Notes: a model not told the origin generated them from the sequence alone. DNA of 64,000 nucleotides from IMGVR_UViG_3300009103_000001:62001-126000; one strand, 5' to 3'. Shown: positions 313 to 55,800, counted from the first letter of the stretch. Made by a program: numbers and translations.

Positions 313-861
313 ATGGATATAAGAAAAATCATAAAAGAGGAAATGGAATCTAAAAATATAGGATATGAAGATATTGTATATGAAGATGATAACCTAATAG
401 TTATATATCCAAAAACAAGGGAAGCTTCATGTAATTATGGTGAAGACACAAATTGGTGTACAGCAGCTGAAGGTGGACAATCTTTCCATGAATATAATGA
501 TAAAGGTAACTTATATTATCATATATGGAAATTTAAAATGCCTAATAATAAACAAAACTATCAAAAAATTGCTAGATTCATTGAATATGGTAAAGAATAT
601 GGTGAACTTGGTGATTTTTTCTTATTTGATGATAGTCAAGTGGATAAGTATGAAATATTATTTAATATTTTAAATGGTAAAAAATTAAAGGAGGGTGGTT
701 TTGAGTATCCAGCAGAGTTAAAACCATTAAATGATTCTTGGGAAAAAGCTTTTATTGCTGTTGATACACATTATGCAAAAAATGGTTTACACAAAACACC
801 AACATATACGGAACCCGATATAGAAGATTTATGGGATGACGATTATGAAGAATTTTTCTAG
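313..861 (+). CDS. Leader-bearing protein (MDIRKIIKEE) with YG-x-x-T-x-WC domain, paralog of 1391 and 52418
   Basis: VYEDDNLIVIYPKTREASCNYGEDTNWCT motif shared with two other ORFs. Confidence 0.8.
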   Translation: MDIRKIIKEEMESKNIGYEDIVYEDDNLIVIYPKTREASCNYGEDTNWCTAAEGGQSFHEYNDKGNLYYHIWKFKMPNNKQNYQKIARFIEYGKEYGELGDFFLFDDSQVDKYEILFNILNGKKLKEGGFEYPAELKPLNDSWEKAFIAVDTHYAKNGLHKTPTYTEPDIEDLWDDDYEEFF

Positions 862-950
862 TGTAAATTGACTTTTATAGTCAATAACTTATATTTATAT
901 AGTAGACCAACCAATTAGGTACACACCTTAATCAATAATTAAAAATTATT

Positions 951-1070
951 ATGAGAAATTACGACCCAAACGATAAACCTTGCTTTGATGGTGATATTTA
1001 TGAAGATTTTATAGATGAAATCCCAGAAGAAGATATTTATTATAATATAGATGATTCTTTTGAATATTAA
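951..1070 (+). CDS. Small acidic hypothetical protein (39 aa)
   Basis: MRNYDPNDKPCFDGDIYEDFIDEIPEEDIYYNIDDSFEY*, A-rich upstream context; below the ORF-track size cutoff. Confidence 0.45.
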   Translation: MRNYDPNDKPCFDGDIYEDFIDEIPEEDIYYNIDDSFEY

Positions 1071-1390
1071 AAAAACATAATCATAAGAGATATAAGACCA
1101 TATACTGATACTAAAGACCTAGAGGTAGGTAAAAGATATATTGCCTATGATATAGGTAATGATGAACTTCATGGTGAACCTTTTATTGTTTTAAAAAAAA
1201 ATGAAAGTATAGATAATATACAAATTCACATCAAATGGCTTAATATGAATAGAGGTACTATCATAACAGAAAAATCTATAGGAAATTGGGAACCAATATT
1301 TAGACCTAGTATGGAGTGGATGTGGTTCTATAGATAATTTAATTCACACAACTTTATTGGATATTTATTATTAATAATATATTTATTGAT

Positions 1391-2839
1391 ATGGATATTA
1401 AATTATTATTAGAAAGAATTATACTTACTGAAGGTAGGGTTGAGAATGCTAGAAAAAAATATCCTAATATACCAGATAAAATTTTTGATTATTACGTAGA
1501 TAATGACCCATCTGGTAATCAAAAGTACCTTAATTGGGTTTTAAAAACTATAACAGCTGATTGGGGTATTACACAAACATCACATTTTAGACAAAATCAT
1601 TCTGAGTTATTAGATAGTTTAACATTCTTCCATGAAAATAACCAAGCGTTTAATAAAAAAGATATAAATCATTATAAAAATTTAACTATGTTTTTCCAAA
1701 CCATTGCTGAGGTTAGGGAAAAGGTGAGACAAAAAAAGGAAGAAAAAAAGGCTAAAAAACAAAGAAACCTTGTTTATCAAGATAAGGATTGGGTTGTAAT
1801 ATCACCTAAATCACATTTAGCTTCTTGTGTTTATGGTTCTGGTACAAAATGGTGTGTTACAATGAAAGATTATTCACATCATTGGGATAGATATTCTAAA
1901 AACGCAACATTCTTTTTTATAATAGATAAAAATAAAGATGATTCGGATAACCTATATAAAGTCGCTTTTAGAAAAATAGGTAGAAGTGGTAAGGTTGAAT
2001 TATGGGACGCTAAAGATTACGAGTTTAGTGAAAATAAAACAGGTTTAGATTATTTAGAAAAGCTACCAAAAAAGATGTTAGAACTAATTGAAAAACATCA
2101 TAGAATATATTTCCCTGAGTCTGAAGGCCCACCAGAATGGATAGAAGATAAACCAAGAGCACAAGCTTTGTATAATCATACTGATGATGAAGATTTGATG
2201 GATACAGGGGATTTCAGATACGGAATACCAATATATGAAACTTCGGAAAATTATTATCAAGTTGCGAATGAACAAGAATTAGATGATGCTTTATGGGAGT
2301 ATTATGATGAATATGATGATTGGGATTTATTGGAGTATTATGATGAAGATGGTTATTACTTATCTTTAAGTGATGAAGAAGAGTTTATTAATGAAATGGT
2401 AGAAAGTCGTGTGGATAATATGGGTGATACAGAAATTCTTGAATATTCGGACAAATTGGACCAATATGAAGACGTTGAAGATGAATTAATAAAATTACAA
2501 GATAGTGAAGATTTTAGTGAAGAAGAAGAACAAAATCTCATAGATAAACAGGTAGAAATATTAGAATTAGCTAAAGAAAATGTTATTTTTGTGGAAACTG
2601 AACATTGGTTTGATTGTCTTGCTGATGGTGTTGTTGAATGTTTAGTAAACGACCATGGCCTTTATAGAAATGCATATGAGTTACATGATAGTGGTGTTAC
2701 AGATTTTGATAGAAGTGGTTTAATAGAAAATAGAGTTTATAATTCTTATGATTGGGATGAAGTTACTGGTGGTTATGGTTATGAAACGGCTGAGGATTTT
2801 AATGGTGAAACTTGGTATGTATATGAGATAGACTATTAA
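1391..2839 (+). CDS. Leader-bearing protein (MDIKLLLERIILTE) with DPS..KYL module, YG-x-x-T-x-WC domain and very acidic C-terminal half
   Basis: 482-aa ORF; ATATTTAT at 1361 and 1379; VYQDKDWVVISPKSHLASCVYGSGTKWCVT. Confidence 0.85.
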   Translation: MDIKLLLERIILTEGRVENARKKYPNIPDKIFDYYVDNDPSGNQKYLNWVLKTITADWGITQTSHFRQNHSELLDSLTFFHENNQAFNKKDINHYKNLTMFFQTIAEVREKVRQKKEEKKAKKQRNLVYQDKDWVVISPKSHLASCVYGSGTKWCVTMKDYSHHWDRYSKNATFFFIIDKNKDDSDNLYKVAFRKIGRSGKVELWDAKDYEFSENKTGLDYLEKLPKKMLELIEKHHRIYFPESEGPPEWIEDKPRAQALYNHTDDEDLMDTGDFRYGIPIYETSENYYQVANEQELDDALWEYYDEYDDWDLLEYYDEDGYYLSLSDEEEFINEMVESRVDNMGDTEILEYSDKLDQYEDVEDELIKLQDSEDFSEEEEQNLIDKQVEILELAKENVIFVETEHWFDCLADGVVECLVNDHGLYRNAYELHDSGVTDFDRSGLIENRVYNSYDWDEVTGGYGYETAEDFNGETWYVYEIDY

Positions 2840-3726: not shown

Positions 3727-4728
3727 ATGAGAAATATTATAAAAAAAATATTAAAAGAAAGTTCAGATTTTGATTGGGTTAGGGATATTGAAGTTGAGAC
3801 TGATTTAACACCGTCACAAATTGTTCATAGATATGATTCTTTACCAAGTGAGATTGTTGGCCCAATGATTAGTAATGGTTTTTTTGATGTATACTATGAA
3901 GACGCTGCCGGAAAATATATTTTAAAAACTGATAGTTGGTGTGACTTTATACCATTATTTAAAAATATTGATAGTCGTTATGGGTATATGGGTAGAGGTT
4001 TAGCTGAAAGAATATTTTGTGATGATGAGGATTATTGGGAACCATATGATTCACATGATTTAGTTTATGATTGGATAAACCAAGTTTGGGATTTTGTTAC
4101 GCGAGATAAAACTTTATACAAATATATAGTAGAATGGATTAATGATAATCTTATTGGTGATGAAATGCATTTTGAGAGAAAAGAAACAACTTTAACAAAA
4201 GAAGATGTTCTTGATTGGTCTGCTGATTCTGATGTTTTGGGTGAAATGATTGATGAATTAGATGTTTTTGAAGATTTAAAACTTGAATTAACTTGGGCCT
4301 ATGGTTCAGCATATAATGTTGCGGCTAGAGATGGAATATATAACTCAGCTGTTGGAGCTGTAATGGATTTCTTTGGTAAAGGTGAGTGGGTACCCAAAGA
4401 AAAGACAGCGAAGTATACATTAAATTTTGACATCACAGATTTAATACAAGATGTTTTAGTGGAGGGAATAGAAAATTGTTGGGACCAATGTAGTAAATAT
4501 TGGAACCCAAAAAACAGAGATTTGGGGGACCAAACAGAAGAAGAAGCTTTTGAAGAGTGGTGTGAAGAATGTTGGGATTTCCCTTTTAGTGAGTTCGGTA
4601 ATTTTATTGATTTTTTTGAATTTTACTTGGATGATAGGGATGAATTATTAACTCCAAGGTTTGATGAATACCCAGATGATAGTAAGATATATCCTTATTT
4701 TGTAGAAGATGTGTATGATAGAATATGA
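3727..4728 (+). CDS. Leader-bearing acidic protein (MRNIIKKILKESSDFDW)
   Basis: Start moved from TTG 3604 to ATG 3727, which follows ATATTTAT at 3712 and begins the shared leader. Confidence 0.8.
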   Translation: MRNIIKKILKESSDFDWVRDIEVETDLTPSQIVHRYDSLPSEIVGPMISNGFFDVYYEDAAGKYILKTDSWCDFIPLFKNIDSRYGYMGRGLAERIFCDDEDYWEPYDSHDLVYDWINQVWDFVTRDKTLYKYIVEWINDNLIGDEMHFERKETTLTKEDVLDWSADSDVLGEMIDELDVFEDLKLELTWAYGSAYNVAARDGIYNSAVGAVMDFFGKGEWVPKEKTAKYTLNFDITDLIQDVLVEGIENCWDQCSKYWNPKNRDLGDQTEEEAFEEWCEECWDFPFSEFGNFIDFFEFYLDDRDELLTPRFDEYPDDSKIYPYFVEDVYDRI

Positions 4729-6785
4729 GTAAAACTAAAATAAATAATAATGATTTTGAATGGGCCAAAGACATCCCATTAATTATGGATACTTGTGAAG
4801 CGTATGGTATATTAAAACCAGGTGATGAAATTATTATTGATGCGATAGATAATTGGGAGGATAACCCAAATCAATGGAATGATACTGATGAGATACAAAC
4901 CTTTTATAGTGTTAAAGCAAAGGTATTAGCTTTAGATGAGTGTAACAATATACATAGAAATAATGAAAGTAATGCTAATACAATTCTAGTATCAATAGAA
5001 GAGGATGGTTATTATGGGTTTGATGATTTATGGGTTGAAGATTTTGTTGGGACATTACCATCACAGTGTCAAAAAGATAATTGTATGTTTTTAATTTGTG
5101 ACACAAATGAGGAAGAATACCAAATAAAATTAATTGAACCATCGTTAAATGAGTCTGATGATTTTAAATGGGTTGATGGGATACCTAAAGATTATTACCC
5201 ACCAGACTTAGAGTCTGGACTTAAAGGTTTAGAAAAATGGGTGGGACAAGCTTATCAAATAGATGATGAGATAGGCCTTTCTGTTCAGGATGTAAAAGAA
5301 AATCCGAACAAAGAGAATATTCAAGATTTAATAAATGTTCTTAAACATTGGAAACCATATCATGATGGTGATGAAGTTTATTGGGCCGTGGAAGACCTTA
5401 TTTCTTCAATAAACCCATTTAGGTTTCAAGACTTAAATAATATGGGATTATTTGAATCTGATTTGGATTGGGTTAATAATACATCAAATAAGATACAGAA
5501 CACTGGTATTGGTCACGATGGACATATAATTTCTTTACAAGAAGTTTATTTCGATTTTTTAAGAACAATAGCTAAGGTTGAGGGTAATTATAACCCACGA
5601 CTTGAATCACACGCTACATTAGACACCAAATATACTAGAAAAGTAAGGGATTATTTAAATTTGAACAGTAGAGACTATCAAGGATTAGCACGTGAATTAC
5701 TTCGTATAGGTTTGGATGAAGCTTTTAAAATGTATTTTGATAATAAGCCACAATTAAGTGAATCTGATGAATTAAATTGGGTTAAGAGCACTGGTTTAGG
5801 TAAAGTAGATTTAAGAGATTGTAAACCTGGTGATATTTTAATCACTAGAAGTGGTAAAACTGTTGAGTATGTTGGCCCAACGGAAAAAGGTAATTATTAC
5901 GACCACGTAGTAAAATATAATGATGGCCATAGTTATGGTAGTAGGACACACGATGGTTATGTGTTTAGGAAAAATAGGCGAGATGATGATGAAGATATCA
6001 TTCATGTGTTAAAAGAATATAAAAAAACAATAACTGAGGCAGCAGGGATTTCATTTGAAGTGAGAAAATGGGGTGAAATTATCTATAATGAGATAATGAA
6101 TAACCCTGATGAGAAAAAAAGGTTAATCATTGATGGTTATGACCACCCTGAAGCGTTCAACGGATTCCCAATAGACTATGTTGTGATAGATTTTTACGAT
6201 AAATTAACGGGATATGGTCAAGAACATTCAGGATATGATAAAGATGGTAACTATGTTGTATTATTATACATACAACCGCAACTAATAAATAATGAATATA
6301 GAGGATATGATTTAAAATCGGCATTAAATCATGAAATGAAACATGCTTGGGAGGACTATCAAAGAGTATCAAAAGGTTATACTAATATTGAACAAACTAA
6401 AGAATCACAAGAGTTATATAATAAAGATTTCATACATTTAATGAGTGATGAAAATATTAAAGGGCCCATTAAAACAGTGTTAAAATATTTTTATTATTTA
6501 ACCAATTTAGAAAAAGGTCCTTATATGGAGAATGTTTATGATAGAAATCCGGCGTATGAAAATATGATTAGAAAAATTATATCTAAAGATTTTGAACAGT
6601 TTAAAGACCGTTTTGATTTAGATGTTAATTGGCATTTAGTAAATACAGCTTATGATATACCATTTGTAAAAAAATTTAAAACTCCATTAGATTTTATTGA
6701 CTATAGTTCTTCAGAACTTAAAAAAAGAGCAATTAAAGTTTTAAAAAAAATTAATAAAATGAAATACATACATGGAATGTTGTAA
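4725..6785 (+). CDS. Putative multi-module polyprotein with C-terminal HExxH metallopeptidase-like domain
   Basis: Internal linkers LNESDDFKW, LFESDLDW, LSESDELNW and ITE; HEMKH at ~6330. Confidence 0.8.
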   Translation: MSKTKINNNDFEWAKDIPLIMDTCEAYGILKPGDEIIIDAIDNWEDNPNQWNDTDEIQTFYSVKAKVLALDECNNIHRNNESNANTILVSIEEDGYYGFDDLWVEDFVGTLPSQCQKDNCMFLICDTNEEEYQIKLIEPSLNESDDFKWVDGIPKDYYPPDLESGLKGLEKWVGQAYQIDDEIGLSVQDVKENPNKENIQDLINVLKHWKPYHDGDEVYWAVEDLISSINPFRFQDLNNMGLFESDLDWVNNTSNKIQNTGIGHDGHIISLQEVYFDFLRTIAKVEGNYNPRLESHATLDTKYTRKVRDYLNLNSRDYQGLARELLRIGLDEAFKMYFDNKPQLSESDELNWVKSTGLGKVDLRDCKPGDILITRSGKTVEYVGPTEKGNYYDHVVKYNDGHSYGSRTHDGYVFRKNRRDDDEDIIHVLKEYKKTITEAAGISFEVRKWGEIIYNEIMNNPDEKKRLIIDGYDHPEAFNGFPIDYVVIDFYDKLTGYGQEHSGYDKDGNYVVLLYIQPQLINNEYRGYDLKSALNHEMKHAWEDYQRVSKGYTNIEQTKESQELYNKDFIHLMSDENIKGPIKTVLKYFYYLTNLEKGPYMENVYDRNPAYENMIRKIISKDFEQFKDRFDLDVNWHLVNTAYDIPFVKKFKTPLDFIDYSSSELKKRAIKVLKKINKMKYIHGML

Positions 6786-6815: not shown

Positions 6816-7373
6816 ATGAAAAAAATACTTACAACAATATTAATTTTAATTAGTCTATTATCTATAGGACAAGATAAAGAGTTATTTGAATATGTGAATC
6901 AATACCGAATAGGTAATAATTTAAAACCATTAGAGTGGTCTGATAAATTAGTTAAAATATCTATAGGACAAAATAATAAGAATATTAAAGATAAATCTTT
7001 ATCACATAGTGTACATAATTCTTATGAAAATTGTTTATTAGGTTATACTATAGCCCCAACCAAAACTGAACATAAAGATTTCATTAAATTTGTTAAAAAA
7101 TATTTTAATTACAAATATAATGTAGACAAAGATATGTCAAATGAAGAATTAAATAGTTTAACTAGGATGTACATGATTTATATTTGGCATAATTCACCAA
7201 AACATAAGGAAAATATGTTAAAAAAAGATGTTAAACATTGTTCATCTGAAAGTTATATTGGTGATTTCGAAATTTTTAATGGTAAATTAAATGTTAATGG
7301 TAAAAGTTATACATATAAACAATTATCTACACACTATAAAGTAGAGTATTACGCCACAATGAATTTACAATGA
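6816..7373 (+). CDS. CAP (SCP-like) domain protein with signal peptide
   Basis: N-terminal signal peptide; VNQYR...LKPLEWSDKL, LSHS, EN and WHNSPKHKENML motifs. Confidence 0.8.
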   Translation: MKKILTTILILISLLSIGQDKELFEYVNQYRIGNNLKPLEWSDKLVKISIGQNNKNIKDKSLSHSVHNSYENCLLGYTIAPTKTEHKDFIKFVKKYFNYKYNVDKDMSNEELNSLTRMYMIYIWHNSPKHKENMLKKDVKHCSSESYIGDFEIFNGKLNVNGKSYTYKQLSTHYKVEYYATMNLQ

Positions 7374-8390
7374 TGGTTCAAAAAAACAAGGTAGTTCCTT
7401 ACCCTTAACTTTCACTTTTTTACATTTAGGTTTTTTATGTGTTTTTTTAGTGAAAATACTTTTTCTATATTTATTATATTTTTTAGGTTTAAATGTTTGT
7501 TTTAGTTTAACCATTTCAACCTCATAGTTATACAACATAGAACCAGCTTCCATTTTTGTCTCAGCTGTAACTTCTAATAAAACACTTATTTTAACATACC
7601 TATATTCTTTAGTTTGTTCACGAGCCTCACTTTTTTCATTTCTCGACATATTTGGTCCATATATATTTGGCCCTTGGTTTGGTTTTGTAATCACATCAAC
7701 ATCATCTACATCAAAACTATCAACAATATTAACAACACTTTCAGCTCTAAGTTTAGCTAGTTCTTCATTACCCATACTTATAGGTTCTTTATCTGTAGAA
7801 GATTCAATAACAACTTTAGTTATTTCACCTTCTTCACTAAGTACATTGAAAATATCATTAATTTTACTTTTTGCGTATTCAGATAACTCATACCCACCCG
7901 TTTCAAAAATATTGTCAGTATCTAATTCAATAGAGTCCTCTAATACTATAATTGAATTTTTAGGTAAAAGTGTATCTTTAGTAACTTTTATGTCAGAAAC
8001 AGTGAAACCTTGTCTTTGTTTAGAAATTATACTATGGTCACTTTTAGTTTTATATGTTTCTATTTTTGCGTTTTCAAAATCTTTTTTACTAACAGATTTT
8101 AATTTTTCTAAATTTTCCCTATTCAACTCAATTTGAGCATCACTAAATAACTGATATAAATCCTCATCACCAGATTCTAATTTATTTTGTATTAACTCAG
8201 CCGCTTTTATATGTGACGAATCTATTGGTTGGGTTTGTGCTTTTATATCGGTCATTGAAGCTAAAGCTATTAATCCGGCTAAAGCCCATTCTTTAAACTC
8301 TTCCTCTAATATTTCTTCTTTTAATATTTCGTCACTTCTGTAGTTTATTACAGATTTAAGTTGACTCTCTTTTAGAATAATTCTTTTCAT
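7365..8390 (-). CDS. Leader-bearing OmpA-like (peptidoglycan-binding) domain protein
   Basis: MKRIILKESQLK leader; FETGGYEL, ESSTDKEP, NEELAKLRAESV and RYVKI resemble the OmpA C-terminal domain; ATATTTAT upstream on the minus strand (8396-8403). Confidence 0.7.
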   Translation of the reverse strand: MKRIILKESQLKSVINYRSDEILKEEILEEEFKEWALAGLIALASMTDIKAQTQPIDSSHIKAAELIQNKLESGDEDLYQLFSDAQIELNRENLEKLKSVSKKDFENAKIETYKTKSDHSIISKQRQGFTVSDIKVTKDTLLPKNSIIVLEDSIELDTDNIFETGGYELSEYAKSKINDIFNVLSEEGEITKVVIESSTDKEPISMGNEELAKLRAESVVNIVDSFDVDDVDVITKPNQGPNIYGPNMSRNEKSEAREQTKEYRYVKISVLLEVTAETKMEAGSMLYNYEVEMVKLKQTFKPKKYNKYRKSIFTKKTHKKPKCKKVKVKGKELPCFFEPSL

Positions 8391-12373: not shown

Positions 12374-12415
12374 ATTCTTTTCCATTCAAGAATATTTATA
12401 TAAAAAAACTTTTAT

Positions 12416-15406: not shown

Positions 15407-15488
15407 CATCACACCAACTAATTAATATTTAATATATCATAATTAAACATTTAATAGTATCTTAGATATTTATTAATAAAACAATATT

Positions 15489-16634: not shown

Positions 16635-16649
16635 AAAAATTATTAATAG

Positions 16650-42243: not shown

Positions 42244-42289
42244 TGGAATAAGTGAATTTATTGCATATTTATTAAGAAAAGTATTAAAT

Positions 42290-45464: not shown

Positions 45465-45805
45465 AAAAAAGAATTGTAAAACTAAACGAAAACGATATTG
45501 AAAGACTCGTTAATAGAATTATAAAAGAAGATGAAAAAGTATCATCTTCACAACTTAAACAAAAAATGAAACAAACTAGTATGGATACTGGTAGTTTAGG
45601 TTTAACACCAAAAGAAAGAGAAGTCTTTAGTACAGCAATAGATATGTTAAAAGATTTTTTCGCACAACAAGGAAATCAGGCAACAGGTAAAGCTTTAAGT
45701 TTATTTAATAGATTTAAGGATAGTTTAAAAGATGTTAAAGCTGAACCAATTAAATCACCAGAAGAGGAACAAAATACTGGTACAGATGAATTCGCGGACC
45801 AATAA
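45461..45805 (+). CDS. Leader-A cargo protein (MKKRIVKLNENDIERLVNRIIKE)
   Basis: Shared leader. Confidence 0.8.
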   Translation: MKKRIVKLNENDIERLVNRIIKEDEKVSSSQLKQKMKQTSMDTGSLGLTPKEREVFSTAIDMLKDFFAQQGNQATGKALSLFNRFKDSLKDVKAEPIKSPEEEQNTGTDEFADQ

Positions 45806-46296
45806 TGGGATTAATTCGTAAAATAATAAAAGAAGAACTTCTTAAGGAAGTTGGGGGATATGATGACCCAACTATAATGGCTCAACATTCTGGTGCAACA
45901 TTACGTTCACTAATAGAAGTATTGTCTGGTATGTTAGAGGCTATTAAAAGATTAGCTCAAAAAATATCAAAAGGCGGGTTAGATAAATTTAAAGGTAGAG
46001 ACGTATTATTTAATTTATCTGACATAATAAATGAAGGATTAAGATTAACAGGTTTATTAATAAAAGATTTCACAGAAGATGATATTATATTTGAAGGTAA
46101 AAAGTTTATTGAAAAAATGAATGAGTTTAAAAGAAAGATTAGACTTTTATCTAATCTTGGTTCAAGTTATACAGAAAAAGACTATAATGAGAAAATATTA
46201 GAATTGATATTTAAATTGGAACCGACAATAAACAGTTATGGTAATAGTTTAAATGATGTTAATAAAAGATTCATGGATAGGTTCGATATGATATAA
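45805..46296 (+). CDS. Leader-B cargo protein (MGLIRKIIKEELLKE), helical
   Basis: Leader nearly the same as that of the sigma factor at 22511. Confidence 0.8.
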   Translation: MGLIRKIIKEELLKEVGGYDDPTIMAQHSGATLRSLIEVLSGMLEAIKRLAQKISKGGLDKFKGRDVLFNLSDIINEGLRLTGLLIKDFTEDDIIFEGKKFIEKMNEFKRKIRLLSNLGSSYTEKDYNEKILELIFKLEPTINSYGNSLNDVNKRFMDRFDMI

Positions 46297-48064: not shown

Positions 48065-49888
48065 ATGGGATATTTATTAAAATCTGGTGAGGTTGGAAAT
48101 ATCGGACTTAAGCATCAAAAAGCTATCCGTGAAGCAACCGTAAACAAGTGGAATGACCTAGGATTTCTTGAAGGTTTAGATGGGCATGTTAAAGAAAACA
48201 TCGCTCTTCTTTACGAGAACCAAGCGTCAACACTTATTAATGAGACAACAGATACGGCTGGTGGAGCATCAACTGGTTCTTTTGAAACAGTAGTTTTTCC
48301 AATCGTAAGGCGTGTTTTCTCAAAATTGTTAGCAAACGACATCGTTTCTGTTCAAGCATTAAATTTACCAATAGGTAAACTTTTCTATTTCGTACCAAAA
48401 GTATCGGATAGAGTTGAGAGTACATCTCCATCTTTTGCTGGTGGAGCATCTGGTGCTACTGCATCACATGGAGCACCAATAATCTGTCACTGTAACACAA
48501 CAGACTGTAATCCTACGACTTACTCTGAATGTGCTAAAAATATGTATGATAGATTTTATGATGACGGAATGTGGGACCAATCAAAAGGTCAAATAATGTT
48601 ACACGTTGATAACGGTACTATGGTAGTGTTTACTGCTTGTACTGACGCAACACTTGGTGTTCCTCATGAATTCATTGGTGGTGTTACTGCACAAGCTGGT
48701 GACGGTTCTGTTAGAAGTCAAATTGTACAAATTTGTAACTTTAGTACAGCTGGAGCTGGTAGACTTTTAGGTCCTGATGGAAATGAAATGGATACTGAAT
48801 CTTTCTTAGCATCAATTGCTGTTACACCTACTGGTACTTTAGTTGATAAAGATGGTTTAACAATTGCTGAGGCTGGTGACCAATTACCAGTTAGAGTTGT
48901 TACACAAAAATATGGTAGAGGTATCGTTTCTTATGGTGATATTTGTGACGCTGAAGGATGTATATTCTTAGAAGTTGATTTAACTCACCCAGTATGTGTA
49001 GAATGTGGTGATGGTACTTTCGATGGTTATATCGGAGCAGCATCTGGAACAACAGCTATTGTATCTGGTGTAGGTTCTAGTGACTTAGGAGGTGTAAACC
49101 TAGCAGTTACTTGGAGGTCTTACCAAGACCTTGAAGAAGAGTGTGAAATGGGAGAAGTATCTTTCGAACTTGATTCTGTTACAGTATCGGTTACTGAAAG
49201 AAAATTAAGAGCTACTTGGACTCCTGAATTAGCACAAGATGTGTCAGCGTTCCATAACATTGATGCAGAAGCTGAATTAACAGCATTACTTTCTGAACAA
49301 GTTGCAGCAGAAATCGACAGGGAAATCCTTAGAGATTTAAGAACTGGGGCGGCTTGGACATTAAGATGGGATTATAACGGATGGAAAAGGTTACCAAATA
49401 ACAACGGTTACACTCAAAAAGATTGGAACCAAACGTTGATTACAGCGGTTAACCAAATTTCAGCTCAAATCCATAAGTCTACTCTTAGGGGTGGTGCTAA
49501 CTTCGTAGTTGTATCTTCTGAGGTATCAGCCATTATGGATGACCTTGAATACTTCCACGTATCTAACGCAGCTCCAGAACAAGACCAATACAATATGGGT
49601 ATTGAAAGAGCTGGTTCTCTTGGTGGACGTTACACTGTATACCGTGACCCTTACGCTCCAGCACACTCGGTGTTAGTTGGACACAAAGGTAAATCACTAT
49701 TGGATACTGGGTATATTTACGCTCCGTATGTACCATTACAGTTAACTCCAACAATGTACAATCCATTTAACTTTGTACCTATCAAAGGTATAATGACGCG
49801 TTACGCGAAAAAGATGGTTAATAACAGGTTCTACGGACATATCCGTGTGGACGGTTTACGTACATTTGATGTTAGAGAATTGAGATAA
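48065..49888 (+). CDS. Major capsid protein (T4 gp23-like) with Cys-rich insertion
   Basis: PIVRRVF..LLANDIVSVQ, RKLRATWTPELAQD, EIDREI, YAPYVPLQ and GIMTRY. Confidence 0.95.
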   Translation: MGYLLKSGEVGNIGLKHQKAIREATVNKWNDLGFLEGLDGHVKENIALLYENQASTLINETTDTAGGASTGSFETVVFPIVRRVFSKLLANDIVSVQALNLPIGKLFYFVPKVSDRVESTSPSFAGGASGATASHGAPIICHCNTTDCNPTTYSECAKNMYDRFYDDGMWDQSKGQIMLHVDNGTMVVFTACTDATLGVPHEFIGGVTAQAGDGSVRSQIVQICNFSTAGAGRLLGPDGNEMDTESFLASIAVTPTGTLVDKDGLTIAEAGDQLPVRVVTQKYGRGIVSYGDICDAEGCIFLEVDLTHPVCVECGDGTFDGYIGAASGTTAIVSGVGSSDLGGVNLAVTWRSYQDLEEECEMGEVSFELDSVTVSVTERKLRATWTPELAQDVSAFHNIDAEAELTALLSEQVAAEIDREILRDLRTGAAWTLRWDYNGWKRLPNNNGYTQKDWNQTLITAVNQISAQIHKSTLRGGANFVVVSSEVSAIMDDLEYFHVSNAAPEQDQYNMGIERAGSLGGRYTVYRDPYAPAHSVLVGHKGKSLLDTGYIYAPYVPLQLTPTMYNPFNFVPIKGIMTRYAKKMVNNRFYGHIRVDGLRTFDVRELR

Positions 49889-50368: not shown

Positions 50369-50803
50369 ATGAAAATTAAAAAAATCATAAAAACTATTTT
50401 GGAATCAGAATTTGACTGGGTTAAAGATTCTGTTTTACATTTTTGGGATATGAATAAAAAATATGTTGTGGATGTTTCAAAGTTAGAAAGATACCCACCA
50501 ATGAGTCTTTCACCAACTTCTGATAGGTATACAGATATATTTATATCAGATATTATAGATTATGGTAAAGAAATAGGGTATGATATAACGGATTTAGGTA
50601 GTACAGCTGATATACAACAACGAGTGCAAGGTTCTTATACCGTTCCTCATGATGTATGTTATATATATTTTAATCCAAACAAATTTGTAGAGTGGGATAT
50701 GTGTGGTATAGACGACCCAACTTGGGATGGTGAATATGAGTTAATGGATGCGGAGAGTTTTATTTATTATATGGAGAATAATTTTATTAAGAATGAACAT
50801 TAA
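50369..50803 (+). CDS. Leader-B cargo protein (MKIKKIIKTILESEFDW)
   Basis: GATATTTATA at 50347. Confidence 0.8.
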   Translation: MKIKKIIKTILESEFDWVKDSVLHFWDMNKKYVVDVSKLERYPPMSLSPTSDRYTDIFISDIIDYGKEIGYDITDLGSTADIQQRVQGSYTVPHDVCYIYFNPNKFVEWDMCGIDDPTWDGEYELMDAESFIYYMENNFIKNEH

Positions 50804-51842
50804 AAAAATTATAAGAGAAGAGTTGGACGATTTTGATTGGGCTAGGGATGATATCTACTTTTCAATAGACTATATTCTAGGTAAACAGATGTATTTTAGG
50901 CATAGTAATATAAATGAACTTGAAAGAGAATATAAAGCTTATAACAATGACAGAATACAACAAATACCAAAAAATAAAATAGTCTTAGGTAATATTAAGT
51001 GGACTAGTATGTTTACGGCAAATTATGTTAAAAATAATATAGCACACATCTATTTACAAGACAGCACTAGTTTACAATATTCAGTGGATATGGTTGAATT
51101 TTATGTAAATAGTGGTATATGGGCTTTAGAGGATGATAATGGTAATATTATTAATGATTTCTCTGGCCAATATTTAAAAGAATCAGAGTTGGATTGGATT
51201 CAAAAATCTGAACCAGATAGAAAAGATATTAGAAGTTTCAATAAAGAAAGGTATAAAACCACTCTTAATTATAATAATGCTGAAATAGGGGATAAATTTA
51301 TCCCACCTGGTAGTCATATGGTATGGACCGTTGATGATAAAGAATTTTGGCGTGGCAAATGGGGTAATGACGAAAATGGAGACCCTGAATATTATAGATA
51401 TTTTATTATATGGATAAAAAATGAGAGGGGTGACCTCAAAAGAAAGTATTATAATAAAACGAATAAATTATTTCCAGGTACTTATAGACCTTGGAGAAAA
51501 ATAGTTGACTCTAATATTAATGAATCGAAAGAGTTTGATTGGGCAAAAGAAATTAAACCTGAAATGACTGCTGAAGCTGTACCACTATATTATAATAAAC
51601 CTCTTTTTTGGTATCATCGGGGTGAACCTAGGCAATGTTGGGGGATGCCTACCATTTATTGGTTATCAAAAAGTTATGTCACTGAAAGGGGTGAAAATAT
51701 ATCTTTATTATGTTATGATGACGGATGTGATGTAGAATCAAAAATTGAATGTAGTGCATTTTATGACTATACAATTGCTAATATGTTTAATGAGGGGACA
51801 CTTAGATTTCAATCACAGTTAAGTGATATTGAACCAACTTAA
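50793..51842 (+). CDS. Putative three-module polyprotein (MNIKKIIREELDDFDW; LKESELDW; INESKEFDW)
   Basis: Start moved to ATG 50793; internal linkers at 51174 and 51516. Confidence 0.8.
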   Translation: MNIKKIIREELDDFDWARDDIYFSIDYILGKQMYFRHSNINELEREYKAYNNDRIQQIPKNKIVLGNIKWTSMFTANYVKNNIAHIYLQDSTSLQYSVDMVEFYVNSGIWALEDDNGNIINDFSGQYLKESELDWIQKSEPDRKDIRSFNKERYKTTLNYNNAEIGDKFIPPGSHMVWTVDDKEFWRGKWGNDENGDPEYYRYFIIWIKNERGDLKRKYYNKTNKLFPGTYRPWRKIVDSNINESKEFDWAKEIKPEMTAEAVPLYYNKPLFWYHRGEPRQCWGMPTIYWLSKSYVTERGENISLLCYDDGCDVESKIECSAFYDYTIANMFNEGTLRFQSQLSDIEPT

Positions 51843-52256: not shown

Positions 52257-52421
52257 ATAAACATCTAAATAAGATACCCCATATTTTCTGAGTTTCTCAC
52301 CCAAAGTGGCGTCATGAGGGTTTTCCTTGATTTCTTTAATAAAATGTTCTATAACATCCGAATAAAGTAAAACCAGTTCGTCTATATTAGATGTCGACCT
52401 TATTTTTTCTTTAAACGTCAT
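52242..52421 (-). CDS. Small protein with P-x-D-x-x-L-G-x-x-x-R motif (59 aa)
   Basis: MTFKEKIRSTSNIDELVLLYSDVIEHFIKEIKENPHDATLGEKLRKYGVSYLDVYKKGK*; ATGA-coupled to 52418. Confidence 0.65.
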   Translation of the reverse strand: MTFKEKIRSTSNIDELVLLYSDVIEHFIKEIKENPHDATLGEKLRKYGVSYLDVYKKGK

Positions 52422-53158
52422 TCTCTTATGCCTTTATTTTTAGCTACAACCATATTAGGTTCACCTTTTTCCATTTTTTCAGTTATGATATCCATAATTT
52501 CTGGTTTTACCATTCTATATACTTTTAGGGTATCAGTAACATTGAATTGTTTATCTTGAACATCCCAAATAGTCATACCATCTTTCTTATTTTTATCATT
52601 GTGGAAAGCCATTTTTGAGAAAACATTAGTTCTACAATCTTTATCTTTAACGGTTTTGTCTATTAAGAAAACTAAAACACCATTTTCAGTATATTGTTTG
52701 AAATAACGCCCATAGTTGTGGTCCTCACTTGATACACACCATTTTGTAGCTTTACCATACATGTTTGAACTACGTGTGGTAAGTGGTAAAATAACGACCC
52801 ATCTATCATCTTCATAAAGAACTTCTGTTTCCTTATTTTTAACTTCAGAACGAGTAATTTTTTCTTTGGCGAATTTAACAGCCTCTATAATGTCTTGGTT
52901 TGACTCATAAGAATATATGTCTTTATTTTCCAAAAGATTTCTTTCAGATAAATCTTCAAAATCTTTTATAACTTCAAACATTTCTTTAAAGGTTTCATTA
53001 TTAAGCTCATTATGAATCCAATCAACCCAATCCTTAGTTTGTTTAATCATGAAAGGTAAATATTTATTAGACTTTGTAGGGTCATTTTCAGATAAAACTT
53101 CTATTACATCAATAGAGTAAGTTGGGTGTTGTGCTTTAAGGTCTCTTTTTTTCGCCAT
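52418..53158 (-). CDS. Leaderless paralog of the YG-x-x-T-x-WC family
   Basis: NDPTKSNKYL, KDIYSY and LYEDDRWVVILPLTTRSSNMYGKATKWCVS. Confidence 0.85.
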   Translation of the reverse strand: MAKKRDLKAQHPTYSIDVIEVLSENDPTKSNKYLPFMIKQTKDWVDWIHNELNNETFKEMFEVIKDFEDLSERNLLENKDIYSYESNQDIIEAVKFAKEKITRSEVKNKETEVLYEDDRWVVILPLTTRSSNMYGKATKWCVSSEDHNYGRYFKQYTENGVLVFLIDKTVKDKDCRTNVFSKMAFHNDKNKKDGMTIWDVQDKQFNVTDTLKVYRMVKPEIMDIITEKMEKGEPNMVVAKNKGIRE

Positions 53159-53359: not shown

Positions 53360-53764
53360 ATGAAAAAGAAAGTAATTAAATTAAACGAAAACGATATAGA
53401 AAATTTGGTTAAGAAAATAATCAAAGAAGAAGATAAGGAAAAAGTGACAACTTTAACCAGACATCCAGCTTATCCAATTATAGATGAATTGGAAATGACT
53501 TTGGATGAGTTAAAAACAAAATTTAAAAGAGATATCGCAAATAGTGTTTCTGGAGCAGATGGATATCATAGTGAGATAGATACATTCGTGTCAAATTTTA
53601 ATAAATTTATTGGGAAAGTTTCTGATTTGAAAAGTAAGATAAATGACCATCAAATAGCGTCAAAAAAGAAACAAGAGTCAAACGCTCAAATGCAAGAAAG
53701 AAAAAGAGCTCATTGGGATAGAAAAGAAAAAGCTAGAAATGAGGGTAGTAAATACTCATATTAA
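53360..53764 (+). CDS. Leader-A cargo protein
   Basis: MKKKVIKLNENDIENLVKKIIKEE; GATATTTATT at 53333. Confidence 0.85.
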   Translation: MKKKVIKLNENDIENLVKKIIKEEDKEKVTTLTRHPAYPIIDELEMTLDELKTKFKRDIANSVSGADGYHSEIDTFVSNFNKFIGKVSDLKSKINDHQIASKKKQESNAQMQERKRAHWDRKEKARNEGSKYSY

Positions 53765-53777
53765 AGACGTTAAATCT

Positions 53778-54113
53778 GTGAAAAAGAAAATAATCAAATT
53801 AAACGAAAGTGATATTCAACGTATTGTTAAAAGAATAATAAGTGAAAATAGTGGAATGGATTTTTACTTAGAAGAACTTGGGGAGTTTGCCAATAACTTA
53901 GAATGGAATGATATATATGATGATGATGAGGACCTTAGAGATTATGATGTACATCAAGTAGAGGAAATAATACAACAAGCCAATGATGACGAATCCCTAA
54001 GTGATAATGAGTGGGATATCATTAGTGAATTTGGGCAAGCTATAATTAATAAGTTAACTGGCGAAAGTGGTGAAGAGGATTATCCGACAGACCAGAGAGA
54101 GTATTGGTCATAA
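53778..54113 (+). CDS. Leader-A acidic cargo protein
   Basis: GTG start at 53778: KKKIIKLNESDIQRIVKRIISE. Confidence 0.75.
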   Translation: MKKKIIKLNESDIQRIVKRIISENSGMDFYLEELGEFANNLEWNDIYDDDEDLRDYDVHQVEEIIQQANDDESLSDNEWDIISEFGQAIINKLTGESGEEDYPTDQREYWS

Positions 54114-54134
54114 CCTTTATATATATAAACACAT

Positions 54135-54431
54135 ATGAAAAAGAAAATAATCAAATTAAACGAAAAGGATATCGAAAGATTGGTAGAAAAAATCATTAAA
54201 GAAGAAAATGATATGTTAATGGGTGAAGACTCAGAAGGTGAAGAAACCTATAATTATGACCAAGATTTACATCATGATTCTGAAGAATTACATGATTTAG
54301 AACATAAACATGGTAGTAAAAGACATATCCGTAATTTAAAAAAGGATATGGATTATGATGAAAAAAGAGGTGTAGGTAAAAATGATAAGTGGAGAAGAGA
54401 AAGAGGTACCCACTTTAATAGAAGAAGTTAG
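54135..54431 (+). CDS. Leader-A cargo protein, His/charge-rich
   Basis: MKKKIIKLNEKDIERLVEKIIKEE. Confidence 0.8.
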   Translation: MKKKIIKLNEKDIERLVEKIIKEENDMLMGEDSEGEETYNYDQDLHHDSEELHDLEHKHGSKRHIRNLKKDMDYDEKRGVGKNDKWRRERGTHFNRRS

Positions 54432-54616
54432 TGAATAGACAAGATAAAATACAAAACATACTTAAAGCCAATAAAAGGTTATTAAAAGAAGACCATGAAA
54501 GTACCGATAAAGGTAAGATTGATTATATAAAAGGTGCTTTAGAAAATTTATCATCTGAGGATTTGGATAAGATTTATTTGTCAGTTGAAGAGTATGACCC
54601 AGAATATGAAAAATGA
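54431..54616 (+). CDS. Leader-C small cargo protein
   Basis: MNRQDKIQNILKANKRLLKE. Confidence 0.75.
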   Translation: MNRQDKIQNILKANKRLLKEDHESTDKGKIDYIKGALENLSSEDLDKIYLSVEEYDPEYEK

Positions 54617-55800
54617 GAAGGTTTGATAAAAATAAAAATATATTAGAAGCCAACTTAAGATTAGAAAGAGAATTTATTACCAGTAAATCTCTTTTATTAA
54701 GCACTACAACAAGTAATACATTTATTGAATCTTGTTTAAATAGCCAATATTTTAACGAAGATGAAAAATCTTTTATACTAGAAACAGTATTACCAAATCA
54801 AAAATTAATACAAGAAGGTGGTTGGGATTGGATTAAAGATAATATAATAGAACCCACAAAAAATGCCATAAAAAAAGGTGTAGATAAAGCAAAATCTTTT
54901 TACACTAAAATAAAAGAACTTATTTCTAATATTGGTAAATTTTTAAAAGAAATATGGTCATATATTATAAAGTTTGGTGAATGGTTGTGGGATAAGGTTT
55001 TTGGTATAGTTAAAAATAAAATTAATAAAAATAAAGCTAAGATTGAAAAAAAGTTAGAGGAATTTAAAAATTTACCACCACAAGAAAGAGACACAGAAAT
55101 AGAACAGTTAATCCAAACTGGAGAATTTTGGAAGGATAAGTCTGGTATTAGCACTATTTTAGGTACTTTTAATAGTGATGTTGAGGGCTCAATAAATAAA
55201 ATGAATTCTGGTAGTGAAGCTATAATGGAATATTGGTCACCTGAAGTTATAGACTTTTTTGGTAAAAGTAAAAAAATTCTAAAAGAAGGTAGTAGTAAAG
55301 CAATGAAAGTAGTGGAGTGGGTTGTTCAGGCTGTTAGTTGGGTTATAAAAATACCTCAAAAAGCTTTAGAATGGATTTTTAGTAAAGCGGCCCAAGGTAT
55401 ATTAATACTTTCTAGTATTGCAACTGAAAAGTTTGGTGGTCCTGGTCCATTCAAATTCCCAAATTTAAGTCATCTTATTGGAGCAACTTTACTTACTATA
55501 GCTGAGTCAATAGTTTTTTCACACACAGTTTTTCATACACATTTTAAAGGTAATTTTATTACAGATGTGATTGTAGGTTGGGAACATATCATGGAAGAGG
55601 TTTTAGGAAAAATCGCTGGTAGTTTTGTTAAACCACTTGTTGCAATCATATCGGGTATTGGTATTGTTTTAGGTATAATGGAGATGATTTTTGCTATTCA
55701 ACACATAAGAAAAGAAAAAGACTTATCACAATACGATAAAAAAGATTTAAATCAAGATGGTAAGGGTGATAGTTTCGATGAAAAATTAGCTACTAGTTAA
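54613..55800 (+). CDS. Leader-C protein with amphipathic and hydrophobic C-terminal helices
   Basis: MRRFDKNKNILEANLRLE; internal LIQEGGWDW and ILKE; TM-like segments. Confidence 0.8.
   Translation: MRRFDKNKNILEANLRLEREFITSKSLLLSTTTSNTFIESCLNSQYFNEDEKSFILETVLPNQKLIQEGGWDWIKDNIIEPTKNAIKKGVDKAKSFYTKIKELISNIGKFLKEIWSYIIKFGEWLWDKVFGIVKNKINKNKAKIEKKLEEFKNLPPQERDTEIEQLIQTGEFWKDKSGISTILGTFNSDVEGSINKMNSGSEAIMEYWSPEVIDFFGKSKKILKEGSSKAMKVVEWVVQAVSWVIKIPQKALEWIFSKAAQGILILSSIATEKFGGPGPFKFPNLSHLIGATLLTIAESIVFSHTVFHTHFKGNFITDVIVGWEHIMEEVLGKIAGSFVKPLVAIISGIGIVLGIMEMIFAIQHIRKEKDLSQYDKKDLNQDGKGDSFDEKLATS

What the first reader, a model, noticed from the sequence alone, without database searches (positions are those of the whole stretch)
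313..55800. Modular leader-plus-cargo system: over 20 unrelated proteins share N-terminal tags ending at a Glu cleavage-type site
Seen: three leader classes. Class A, K(I/V)(I/V)KLNE(N/S/K)DIxx(L/I)Vxx(I)I(K/S)E, at 43015, 43642, 44011, 45461, 53360, 53778 and 54135, with weaker versions at 8390 and 27138. Class B, (I/L)xK(I/L)(I/L)(K/R)E, often followed by xxD(F/L)DW, at 313, 1391, 3727, 22511, 27764, 45805, 50369 and 50793. Class C, MxRxxKxxxIxxANxR(L/V)xxE, at 43314, 54431 and 54613. Downstream sequences are mostly unrelated. These genes follow the ATATTTAT element or lie in operons that do, and the densest cluster sits between the prohead protease and scaffold genes. Established: T4 internal proteins use a short N-terminal capsid-targeting sequence removed by gp21 after Glu in (I/L)-x-E. 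Inference: this is a large, extensible system that packages diverse proteins into the head, strips the tag with the gp21-like protease and ejects the cargo into the host.
Basis: partly seen in the sequence, partly recalled or inferred. Interest (0 to 1): 0.93.

Follow-up and report, generated by a model that had tools for sequence, protein, structure and literature searches.

The report
Phage head-targeting leader tags on many proteins
An uncultured, distantly T4-like phage puts short conserved N-terminal tags ending in hydrophobic-x-Glu on about a quarter of the genes examined, most likely to load unrelated proteins into its head and trim them with its T4-type head protease, an enlarged version of a mechanism known from T4.

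Summary
In the window, 17 genes carry clear leaders (7 class A, 7 class B, 3 class C) and 5 carry weaker ones. Their downstream parts are mutually unrelated. The tags are conserved at the N-termini of about 68 distinct ORFs in related uncultured phages. There Glu at the last position (94%) and I/L/M two residues before it (96%) are kept while the residue between varies, and these are the positions that control T4 gp21 processing. The phage encodes a gp21-family protease. Its major capsid protein keeps the same tripeptide where T4 gp23 is cut. One cargo appears behind three different upstream contexts, each ending in (I/L)-x-Glu. Leaders track a late-promoter-like element: 34 of 77 genes inside such units, 0 of 73 outside. 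New points are multi-module, polyprotein-like cargo with internal junctions, a "DFDW" motif after class B sites, a tagged ECF sigma factor, and a tagged/untagged paralogue pair. No relative is cultured, so packaging, cleavage and ejection remain inferred. Verdict: a strongly expanded new variant of the T4 capsid-targeting-sequence system. Confidence is about 0.62, higher for classes A and C than for class B/DFDW.

The parts
42290..43018 (+). Prohead protease, T4 gp21 family. It has I-I-E at residue 16 and L-S-E near the C-terminus as possible autocleavage sites.
   Evidence: PHROG 207 head maturation protease, E 1.4e-41. BLASTP against T4 gp21 gives 4e-23, with the GELNHP and SSRG.GS blocks identical.
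43015..43296 (+). Class A gene: 22-aa leader (43015-43080) and a 71-aa acidic cargo.
43314..43634 (+). Class C gene: 22-aa leader ending V-L-K-E (43314-43379).
43642..43980 (+). Class A gene: 22-aa leader (43642-43707).
44011..45156 (+). Class A gene with three cargo modules: X (aa 24-195), Y (198-277) and Z (325-381). The leader is 44011-44076. An internal joint L-S-E202 lies at 44608-44616.
   Evidence: Homologues place module Y directly behind a leader, or place a full leader between X and Y. AF2 gives a helix at 9-22 and pLDDT<50 at 22-27 and 189-211.
45461..45805 (+). Class A gene: 23-aa leader (45461-45529).
45805..46296 (+). Class B gene: 15-aa leader ending L-L-K-E (45805-45849). The cargo starts VGGYDDP.
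   Evidence: The same cargo follows a class A leader in L014 and L019, and follows an internal I-D-E in a two-module protein in L013.
46824..48029 (+). Putative scaffold: acidic, and in the position of T4 gene 22.
   Evidence: Synteny protease-x-MCP. The C-terminal 92 aa are homologous to the syntenic protein of Flavobacterium phage immuto (E 3e-13). No detectable similarity to T4 gp22.
48065..49888 (+). Major capsid protein, gp23 family. Predicted maturation site L-I-N-E at aa 57-60 (48233-48244); a second candidate is L-Y-E51.
   Evidence: PHROG 138, E 1.3e-65. Aligns to T4 gp23. L-[IL]-[NTS]-E is kept in all 37 distinct relatives, followed by a variable linker.
50369..50803 (+). Class B gene: 12-aa leader ending I-L-E, then the DFDW-type motif.
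50793..51842 (+). Class B gene with three modules. Leader 50793-50819. Internal joints L-K-E/ELDW at aa 128-136 (51174-51200) and I-N-E/EFDW at aa 242-251 (51516-51545).
   Evidence: AF2 gives three folded modules, with the joints in pLDDT<50 linkers at 1-20, 125-159 and 222-257.
53360..55800 (+). Second leader operon: class A genes at 53360, 53778 and 54135, and class C genes at 54431 and 54613. The 54613 cargo has a TM-like segment at aa 334-352.
   Evidence: An ATATTTAT element lies at 53334.
313..861 (+). Class B gene: 9-aa leader. The cargo is related to the 1391 cargo.
1391..2839 (+). Divergent class B gene: 14-aa leader ending I-L-T-E.
   Evidence: Residues 15-238 align (E 2e-19) to residues 2-231 of the leaderless paralogue 52418-53158(-).
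3727..6785 (+). Class B gene 3727-4728 (11-aa leader plus DFDW) and the DFDW multi-module gene 4725-6785. The latter has internal joints L-F-E/DLDW at aa 242-249 and L-S-E/ELNW at aa 344-352.
22511..23050 (+). ECF-type sigma factor with a 16-aa class B leader, at the end of the tail-fibre operon.
   Evidence: Pfam Sigma70_r2 7e-14 and r4_2 5e-13, with r2 starting at aa 30. The 53% orthologue keeps the leader and duplicates it.
27174..27758 (-). Class B gene: 11-aa leader plus DFDW.
31659..33521 (+). 620-aa gene that starts with a DLDW-type motif only, just upstream of the large terminase gene.
7365..8390 (-). Weak class-A-like leader, then a hydrophobic segment and an OmpA-like domain.
26809..27138 (-). 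Weak class-A-like leader ending R-M-N-E.
52418..53158 (-). Leaderless paralogue of the 1391/313 cargo. It serves as a natural control, because its unit has no ATATTTAT.
42265..42272 (+). One example of the ATATTTAT late-promoter-like element. Other copies lie 4-23 nt upstream of the starts at 313, 1391, 3727, 8390(-), 12416, 15489, 27138(-), 27758(-), 33595, 35698, 37625, 44011, 50369, 53360 and 55801-57303(-).
   Evidence: 44 copies against 24 expected.

Best explanation
The leaders are prohead-targeting propeptides.

Proposed sequence of events:
1. Late in infection the tagged proteins are made together with the head genes.
2. The amphipathic leader helix binds the scaffold/core of the assembling prohead.
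3. The gp21-type protease (42290-43018) cuts after the Glu of hydrophobic-x-Glu. This removes the leader and separates the modules of multi-module proteins at their internal joints.
4. The freed cargo stays trapped in the head and leaves with the DNA at the next infection.

Shown: the motifs, their modularity, their conservation pattern, the protease family, the matching site in the MCP, the predicted flexible joints, and the link to late-type units.
Inferred: binding to the core, cleavage, retention and ejection.

The inference is stronger for classes A and C, which sit in the head module, than for the large class B/DFDW family.
For: 1. N-terminal enrichment is far above chance, and homology ends sharply at the Glu codon while synonymous changes are tolerated.
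2. Across 68 distinct class A ORFs from relatives, P1 is Glu in 64 and P3 is I/M/L in 65, while P2 is K/R/S/N/A/T. These ORFs fall into at least 19 cargo clusters. In T4, residues 8 and 10 of the 10-aa CTS (P3 and P1) govern processing (PMC9026906).
3. The protease is of the gp21 family. Proteases of this family cut after Glu in T4, phiKZ, 201phi2-1 and SPN3US (PMC5694885).
4. The MCP keeps L-[IL]-x-E in 37 of 37 relatives, at the place that aligns within about 10 residues of the T4 gp23 cut.
5. The same cargo follows a class B leader, a class A leader or another module, and each of these contexts ends in (I/L)-x-E. Module Y of the 44011 protein behaves the same way, and a full leader can sit between modules.
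6. Eleven of 11 true internal DFDW motifs have [ILMV]-x-E within 0-5 residues upstream, against a 13% background.
7. The joints fall in pLDDT<50 linkers in two AF2 models.
8. Over 150 genes, leaders occur in 34 of 77 genes in ATATTTAT-headed units and in 0 of 73 outside them (Fisher 1.6e-12). The same element precedes the terminase, portal and protease genes.
9. In 17 of 19 close relatives, 1-4 class A genes lie between the protease and MCP genes.
10. A tagged and an untagged paralogue differ by exactly the leader.
11. T4 ipII/ipIII, alt and gp24 start with 10-aa peptides ending hydrophobic-x-E, as read from NC_000866. Class B leaders have the same length and shape.
Against: - There is no virion proteome, no cultured relative and no named homologue. 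Packaging, cleavage and ejection are therefore untested.
- Many cargos are strongly acidic (pI 4.1-5), unlike the basic T4 internal proteins.
- About 34 tagged genes in 102 kb, some of 580-750 aa, is a large load for one head.
- The conserved DFDW motif after class B sites has no role in the model.
- One tagged protein is a sigma factor, which is not a usual virion component.
- Class C at 54613 ends L-E-R-E.
- The ATATTTAT element is only a consensus match, and most of the window is late-type anyway.
- The leaders have no detectable sequence homology to the T4 CTS.
Confidence: 0.62

Rival explanations
1. Split reading. Classes A and C in the head module are capsid-targeting propeptides. The class B/DFDW family (about 25 genes) is a separate late multigene family whose N-terminal peptide and DFDW motif serve another purpose. 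One such purpose would be docking diverse accessory domains onto a common virion hub such as head fibres, whiskers or the baseplate. Another would be acting as flexible linkers of beads-on-a-string proteins that are never cleaved.
For: - The DFDW motif is specific to class B and is not explained by cleavage.
- Class B genes are scattered over more than 60 kb, are large, and are often far from the head genes.
- One of them is a sigma factor.
- A conserved N-terminal anchor with variable C-terminal parts is the usual design of phage receptor-binding proteins (own knowledge).
Against: - The class B core is the C-terminal half of class A.
- The same cargo carries class A or class B leaders in different phages.
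- Class B genes follow the MCP gene in both relative groups.
- Every internal DFDW is preceded by hydrophobic-x-Glu, which docking does not require.
- The tags are 9-16 aa, much shorter than known anchor domains.
Confidence: 0.2
2. The leader is an uncleaved assembly helix. It binds scaffold or capsid and stays on the mature protein, and the terminal Glu is a helix or charge feature rather than a cleavage site.
For: - The leaders are amphipathic-helix compatible: class A hydrophobic moment is 0.54-0.73, above 98.5-99.9% of shuffles.
- In T4, targeting and processing are separable, because Asp at position 10 blocks cutting but not targeting (PMC9026906).
Against: - The P1 Glu is almost invariant and P3 is hydrophobic while P2 is free, which is a protease-site pattern rather than a helix pattern.
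- The same tripeptide occurs at the MCP delta-domain end.
- Internal joints lack the helix but keep the tripeptide.
Confidence: 0.1
3. The tag is a recognition signal for another machine. Candidates are the phage-encoded Clp-type AAA+ ATPase (23729-26206, minus strand), a membrane or secretion route, or a degron that times protein turnover.
For: - An 825-aa Clp-type ATPase is encoded in the window (PHROG 4871, E 1e-259).
- Short N-terminal tags are typical substrates of AAA+ unfoldases (own knowledge).
Against: - No ClpP partner was seen.
- The tags cluster beside the prohead protease and scaffold genes, not beside the ATPase.
- The tags are not hydrophobic signal peptides.
- This reading explains neither the MCP site nor the P1/P3 pattern.
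Confidence: 0.05
4. The repeat is primarily a nucleic-acid feature, such as a translation-initiation enhancer at the 5' end of late mRNAs or a recombination joint. Alternatively it is merely the conserved remnant of a fast-diverging paralogue family.
For: - Four copies are 92-97% identical in DNA, which suggests recent copying or gene conversion.
- The host type probably lacks Shine-Dalgarno-led initiation (own knowledge).
Against: - Other copies differ at up to 8 synonymous codons yet keep the peptide.
- Relatives keep the peptide with different codons.
- The canonical late genes (terminase, portal, MCP) lack it.
- It also occurs internally in proteins.
- The cargos include unrelated Pfam families and range from 60 to 770 aa.
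Confidence: 0.05

Closest known systems
T4 capsid targeting sequence (CTS) on internal proteins IPI-III and Alt, and the gp24 propeptide, removed by the gp21 protease
   Same: - A short N-terminal peptide ending in hydrophobic-x-Glu (T4 peptides read from the record).
- The peptide is shared by otherwise unrelated proteins.
- A gp21-family protease is encoded next to the scaffold and MCP genes.
- P3 and P1 are the constrained positions (PMC9026906).
- The published view is that the CTS lets T4-like phages load diverse proteins (PMC3012670, PMC9026906).
   Different: - No sequence similarity to the T4 CTS.
- Three leader classes, one of them 22-23 aa long.
- About 34 tagged genes in 102 kb, against a handful in T4.
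- Leaders and joints also occur inside multi-module proteins.
- A DFDW motif follows class B sites.
- The cargos are mostly acidic.
- A dense class A cluster is inserted between the protease and scaffold genes. This cluster is absent from T4, from Flavobacterium phage immuto and from the more distant relatives.
Inner-body and ejection proteins of giant phages (phiKZ, 201phi2-1, SPN3US), processed by gp21-like proteases
   Same: - Many head proteins are processed after Glu.
- Propeptides carry several redundant sites.
- Paralogous head proteins share conserved N-termini.
- Some cargos have a TM segment after the propeptide (PMC5694885).
   Different: - Their motif has a small P3 residue (A/S/G-x-E), whereas here it is I/L/M.
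- Their propeptides are mostly longer than 100 aa.
- Those phages lack a T4-type scaffold, and their MCP and protease are only distantly related.
Polyvalent proteins of phages and conjugative elements (Iyer et al. 2017; own knowledge, not checked here)
   Same: Several unrelated effector modules are strung in one polypeptide that is delivered with the DNA and is thought to be cut into pieces.
   Different: Those proteins are very large, are built from known enzyme domains, and carry their own peptidase domains. Here the modules are small and unannotated, and the joints match the prohead protease motif.
T4 Alt versus ModA/ModB: a packaged and an unpackaged paralogue (own knowledge)
   Same: One protein family exists in a tagged late copy (1391, 313) and an untagged copy in another transcription unit (52418-53158, minus strand).
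   Different: The family here is unrelated to ADP-ribosyltransferases. It gives only a weak PcfJ-like hit and a match to PHROG 17056, of unknown function.
Encapsulin cargo-loading peptides (own knowledge)
   Same: A short transferable peptide directs unrelated cargo into an HK97-fold shell.
   Different: Encapsulin peptides are usually C-terminal, are not cleaved, and involve no protease or DNA packaging.

Membership tests
T4-type CTS / internal-protein system | A gp21-family (S77) prohead protease is encoded in the head module. | tested here: met
   PHROG 207, E 1.4e-41. BLASTP against T4 gp21 gives 4e-23, with the His and Ser blocks conserved.
T4-type CTS / internal-protein system | An N-terminal peptide of about 10-20 aa ends in (L/I)-x-Glu. 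| tested here: met
   Leaders are 9-23 aa. P1 is Glu in 64 of 68 and P3 is I/M/L in 65 of 68. T4 peptides were read for comparison. Exception: 54613 ends L-E-R-E.
T4-type CTS / internal-protein system | The peptide is shared by otherwise unrelated proteins. | tested here: met
   One related pair among 22 cargos. At least 19 cargo clusters in relatives. Leader swapping on the same cargo.
T4-type CTS / internal-protein system | The leader is homologous in sequence to the T4 CTS. | tested here: not met
   tblastn of the leader against 50,697 phage records found nothing. T4 and class A/B/C peptides share only length and the terminal tripeptide.
T4-type CTS / internal-protein system | The tagged genes are expressed late, with the head genes. 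| tested here: inconclusive
   All 34 tagged genes lie in units headed by ATATTTAT, which also precedes the terminase, portal and protease genes. There are no transcript data.
T4-type CTS / internal-protein system | The protein is present in virions with its N-terminus starting after the Glu. | not testable with these tools
   No cultured relative or proteome exists.
T4-type CTS / internal-protein system | The cargo is ejected into the host with the DNA. | not testable with these tools
   Inference only.
Giant-phage (phiKZ-like) processed head proteins | The cleavage motif has a small P3 residue (A/S/G-x-E). | tested here: not met
   P3 is I/M/L/V in 67 of 68.
Giant-phage (phiKZ-like) processed head proteins | Long propeptides (over 100 aa) and no T4-type scaffold. 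| tested here: not met
   Leaders are 9-23 aa. A scaffold-position gene is present.
Polyvalent proteins | Very large proteins with recognisable enzyme domains and their own peptidase. | tested here: not met
   No Pfam or PHROG domains in the multi-module cargos. Sizes are 230-750 aa.

The most novel reading that the evidence does not exclude
A lineage of T4-like phages has turned the capsid-targeting peptide into a general delivery platform. About a quarter of the genes in the 102 kb examined are tagged.

Cargo modules would be shuffled as beads on a string and released by the prohead protease at a dedicated joint (hydrophobic-x-Glu followed by DFDW). The load would include an ECF sigma factor that enters with the DNA and redirects host RNA polymerase from the first moment of infection. 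The DFDW motif would then be a second signal kept on the mature modules, for retention or exit.
Probability: 0.2. Interest if true: 0.85.

Novelty: new variant of a known kind. Interest (0 to 1): 0.68.

Why it matters
If correct, the tags give a simple sequence rule for picking out the proteins an uncultured phage carries into its host. These are the proteins most likely to act first against host defences and transcription. The rule would yield dozens of unannotated candidates per genome, and hundreds across the clade.

It would also show that the T4 capsid-targeting principle is old and widespread outside enterobacterial phages. It would show that the principle scales to tens of cargos, and that it tolerates gene fusion because the protease separates the modules again.

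The natural leader variants, 9 to 23 residues long, could serve as parts for loading foreign proteins into phage heads. A packaged sigma factor would be a new way for a phage without a virion RNA polymerase to start its programme.

Tried and rejected
- tblastn of the class A leader against cultured-phage records found nothing. The nearest cultured phage, Flavobacterium phage immuto, has no class A cluster.
- Pfam and PHROG scans of the cargos gave almost nothing. The exceptions were the sigma factor, an OmpA-like domain and a weak PcfJ-like hit.
- Foldseek searches of two AF2 models against the PDB gave no significant match, so cargo function stays unknown.
- Database searches for homologues returned only unnamed metagenomic proteins.
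- The scaffold candidate shows no similarity to T4 gp22.
- I considered a promoter-module repeat and rejected it, because similarity starts at the ATG and not upstream.
- I considered chance in an AT-rich genome rich in K/I/L/E and rejected it on the shuffles and the positional enrichment.
- I considered that internal leaders were only mis-called starts and rejected it for P0054 and P0057, where a homologous module precedes the leader.
- I did not use the representative-protein search, because a profile of about 25 residues cannot reach significance in 1.8 billion sequences.

Full report
**What the window is.** The 64 kb come from a 210,157-bp uncultured viral contig (IMG/VR UViG 3300009103_000001). 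The window covers contig positions 62,001-126,000. GC content is about 29%. The window encodes a T4-type large terminase, portal, prohead protease and major capsid protein (PHROG E-values from 1e-41 to 1e-65). The nearest cultured phage is Flavobacterium phage immuto, at 40-45% identity for MCP and protease. A gene with a CHU_C domain elsewhere on the contig also points to a Bacteroidota host. Most other genes have no family match.

- Translating all plausible genes shows the three N-terminal motifs at the stated places.
- Class A is a 22-23-residue peptide (consensus M-K-K-I-I-K-L-N-E-N-D-I-E-x-L-V-K-K-I-I-K-E) on seven genes.
- Class B is a 9-16-residue peptide with the core I-K-K-I-L-K-E on seven genes. 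It is usually followed within 0-5 residues by an acidic-aromatic-acidic-Trp motif ("DFDW").
- Class C has the form M-x-R-x-x-K...A-N-x-R-L-x-x-E and sits on three genes.
- Five more genes carry weak or partial versions.
- The class B core is also the C-terminal half of class A.
- The core heptad occurs 18 times in 20,143 residues, and 13 of those hits are within the first 30 residues (binomial 2.5e-9). Residue shuffles give 0.19 genes with an N-terminal hit, against 13 observed.
- After removing the leaders, only one pair of 22 cargos is related.

**The signal is a peptide, not a DNA module.** Between class A copies the 60 nt of leader are 72-97% identical. The 60 nt on either side are 17-43% identical, which is the background level for this composition. 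Similarity begins at the start codon and ends at the Glu codon. Pairs differ at up to eight synonymous codons.

**Relatives.**
- The protease recovered 80 related loci from viral contigs.
- A profile of the seven window leaders found about 68 distinct ORFs in them. Nearly all hits are at the N-terminus, and the ORFs fall into at least 19 cargo clusters.
- At the end of the leader, P1 is Glu in 64 of 68 and P3 is I/M/L in 65 of 68. P4 is I/V in 66 of 68. P2 is K, R, S, N, A or T.
- In 17 of 19 close relatives that hold both genes, one to four class A genes lie between the protease and MCP genes. A further class A gene lies a few kb after the MCP gene, as in the window.
- More distant relatives (protease about 50% identical) have protease, scaffold and MCP genes adjacent as in T4. 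They still have class-B-like leaders on the genes after the MCP gene.
- All homologues are unnamed metagenomic proteins, some from the <0.22 µm Tara fraction.

**Why a protease site is the best reading.**
- Proteases of the gp21 family cut after Glu in T4 and in the giant phages (PMC5694885).
- In the T4 CTS, residues 4 and 7 matter for targeting and residues 8 and 10 for processing (PMC9026906). Residues 8 and 10 are P3 and P1, which are exactly the positions constrained here.
- The T4 record shows ipII/ipIII, alt and gp24 starting with 10-residue peptides that end I-A-E, F-D-E and L-R-E. Class B leaders have the same length and ending.
- The window protease aligns to T4 gp21 with the His and Ser blocks identical.
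- The MCP residues 62-107 align to T4 gp23 77-125.
- Just upstream, all 37 distinct MCPs of the clade keep L-[IL]-[NTS]-E. This is followed by a linker of variable length and then the invariant mature domain.

**Modularity and internal joints.**
- The cargo that starts VGGYDDP follows a class B leader in the window. In two relatives it follows a class A leader. In a third it follows another 170-residue module. Each time the preceding residues are (I/L)-x-E.
- The 44011 protein has three modules. Its module Y follows L-S-E202. In other phages module Y sits directly behind a leader, and in two homologues a complete class A leader lies between modules X and Y.
- The 50793 and 4725 proteins have internal copies of the joint (hydrophobic-x-Glu, then DFDW). 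Their homologues keep the leader but combine different modules.
- Over all loci, 11 of 11 genuine internal DFDW motifs have the tripeptide within five residues upstream, against a 13% background.
- In AF2 models of the 50793 and 44011 proteins, the leader is a helix. The leader-cargo joint and every internal joint fall in segments with pLDDT below 50, between folded modules.

**Expression context and controls.**
- The octamer ATATTTAT occurs 44 times against 24 expected. It lies 4-23 nt upstream of the terminase, portal, protease and tail-fibre-like genes and of nine leader genes.
- I fetched a further 38 kb of the same contig.
- Upstream of the window, small minus-strand genes of early type alternate with plus-strand islands headed by the octamer. 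Nearly every island gene starts with a class B leader, and none of the minus-strand early-type genes does.
- None of the thymidylate synthase, thioredoxin, PhoH, sugar-modification or methyltransferase genes has a leader.
- Over 150 genes, 34 of 77 in octamer-headed units are tagged and 0 of 73 outside them (Fisher 1.6e-12).
- A natural control supports the boundary. Residues 15-238 of the 1391 protein align to residues 2-231 of a leaderless paralogue on the other strand (52418-53158). The tagged copy therefore differs by exactly its 14-residue leader ending I-L-T-E.

**Cargo.** Functions are mostly unknown. The exceptions are:
- an ECF-type sigma factor at the end of the tail-fibre operon, whose leader is conserved and duplicated in a 53% orthologue;
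- an OmpA-like protein;
- a weak PcfJ-like family;
- a class C protein with a TM-like segment.

Structure searches found nothing significant.

**Mechanism.** I commit to the following. The tagged proteins are made late. The amphipathic leader binds the prohead core. The protease cuts after the Glu, both at the leader and at the internal joints. The cargo is retained and later ejected. Only the sequence logic is shown, and the physical steps are inferred. Confidence is 0.62 overall, higher for classes A and C.

**Weak points.**
- There is no proteome.
- Many cargos are acidic.
- The number and size of class B genes is large.
- The DFDW motif is unexplained.
- One tagged protein is a sigma factor.
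- One class C site is non-canonical.

The main rival keeps classes A and C as targeting peptides and assigns the class B/DFDW family another role, such as docking. Other rivals are an uncleaved helix, a tag for the phage Clp-type ATPase, and an RNA or DNA feature. These fit fewer facts.

**Comparison with the known.** The principle is published for T-even phages: a conserved CTS on diverse internal proteins (PMC3012670; PMC9026906). Processed head proteins are known in giant phages (PMC5694885). Membership in the T4-type system is met for the protease family, leader length, terminal tripeptide and modularity. It is not met for leader sequence homology. It is untestable for packaging, cleavage and ejection. 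The features new here are:
- three leader classes;
- about 34 tagged genes in 102 kb;
- a class A cluster inserted between the protease and scaffold genes;
- leaders and joints inside multi-module proteins;
- the DFDW motif;
- the tagged sigma factor.

I rate it a new variant of a known kind, with interest 0.68.

Noticed in passing
window 22511-23050 (+); L087 3971-4546: An ECF-type sigma factor (Pfam r2 and r4_2) carries a class B leader. It is translationally coupled to the last gene of the tail-fibre operon. Its 53% orthologue keeps the leader in duplicate.
   Followed up: partly
window 50793-51842, 4725-6785, 3727-4728, 27174-27758(-), 50369-50803; L093 and L094: A conserved acidic-aromatic-acidic-Trp-(V/A/I)-x-(D/E) motif starts every class B cargo module, whether N-terminal or internal. 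Its role is unexplained.
   Followed up: partly
window 297-304, 12392-12399, 33575-33582, 35676-35683, 42265-42272 and others: ATATTTAT lies only 4-23 nt upstream of many start codons, on both strands. It looks like a late-promoter element with very short or absent 5' leaders. It differs from T4 TATAAATA and from host-type promoters.
   Followed up: partly
window 23729-26206 (-): A phage-encoded 825-aa Clp-type AAA+ ATPase (PHROG 4871, E 1e-259). No ClpP partner was seen in the window.
   Followed up: no
window 39330-40460 (+): A glutamine synthetase-like gene (Pfam Gln-synt_C 3e-18, Gln-synt_N 5e-8) lies between the portal-side genes and the protease gene.
   Followed up: no
window 48065-49888 (+), residues about 110-350: The MCP is 607 aa. 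A Cys-rich insertion of about 240 residues lies between the N-terminal arm and the gp23-like core. GC content here is 38%, against about 29% around it.
   Followed up: no
window 12416-22109 (+): The tail-fibre-like genes (996 and 939 aa, PHROG 25468, up to 11 repeated stretches) have 33-40% GC, clearly above the rest of the window.
   Followed up: no
window 52418-53158 (-), 1391-2839 (+), 313-861 (+): One protein family (PHROG 17056, weak PcfJ-like hit) is present as two tagged copies and one untagged copy. This is reminiscent of packaged versus early-expressed paralogues in T4.
   Followed up: yes
L092 1-10000; L095 1-10000 (contig beyond the window's right end): A cluster of more than 20 genes encodes glycosyltransferases, methyltransferases, sulfotransferases, epimerases and an aminotransferase, next to PhoH. 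It could be a sugar-modification pathway for DNA or the virion.
   Followed up: no
window 3191-3595 (+); 27786-28583 (+); 7365-8390 (-): A SET-domain protein (Pfam hit listed), a nucleotidyltransferase-like protein, and an OmpA-like protein with a long charged N-terminus before a hydrophobic segment.
   Followed up: no
P0054 residues 170-235; P0057 residues 175-245: A complete class A leader, including its Met, sits in the middle of homologues of the 44011 protein. This suggests in-frame fusions of neighbouring tagged genes that remain viable.
   Followed up: partly
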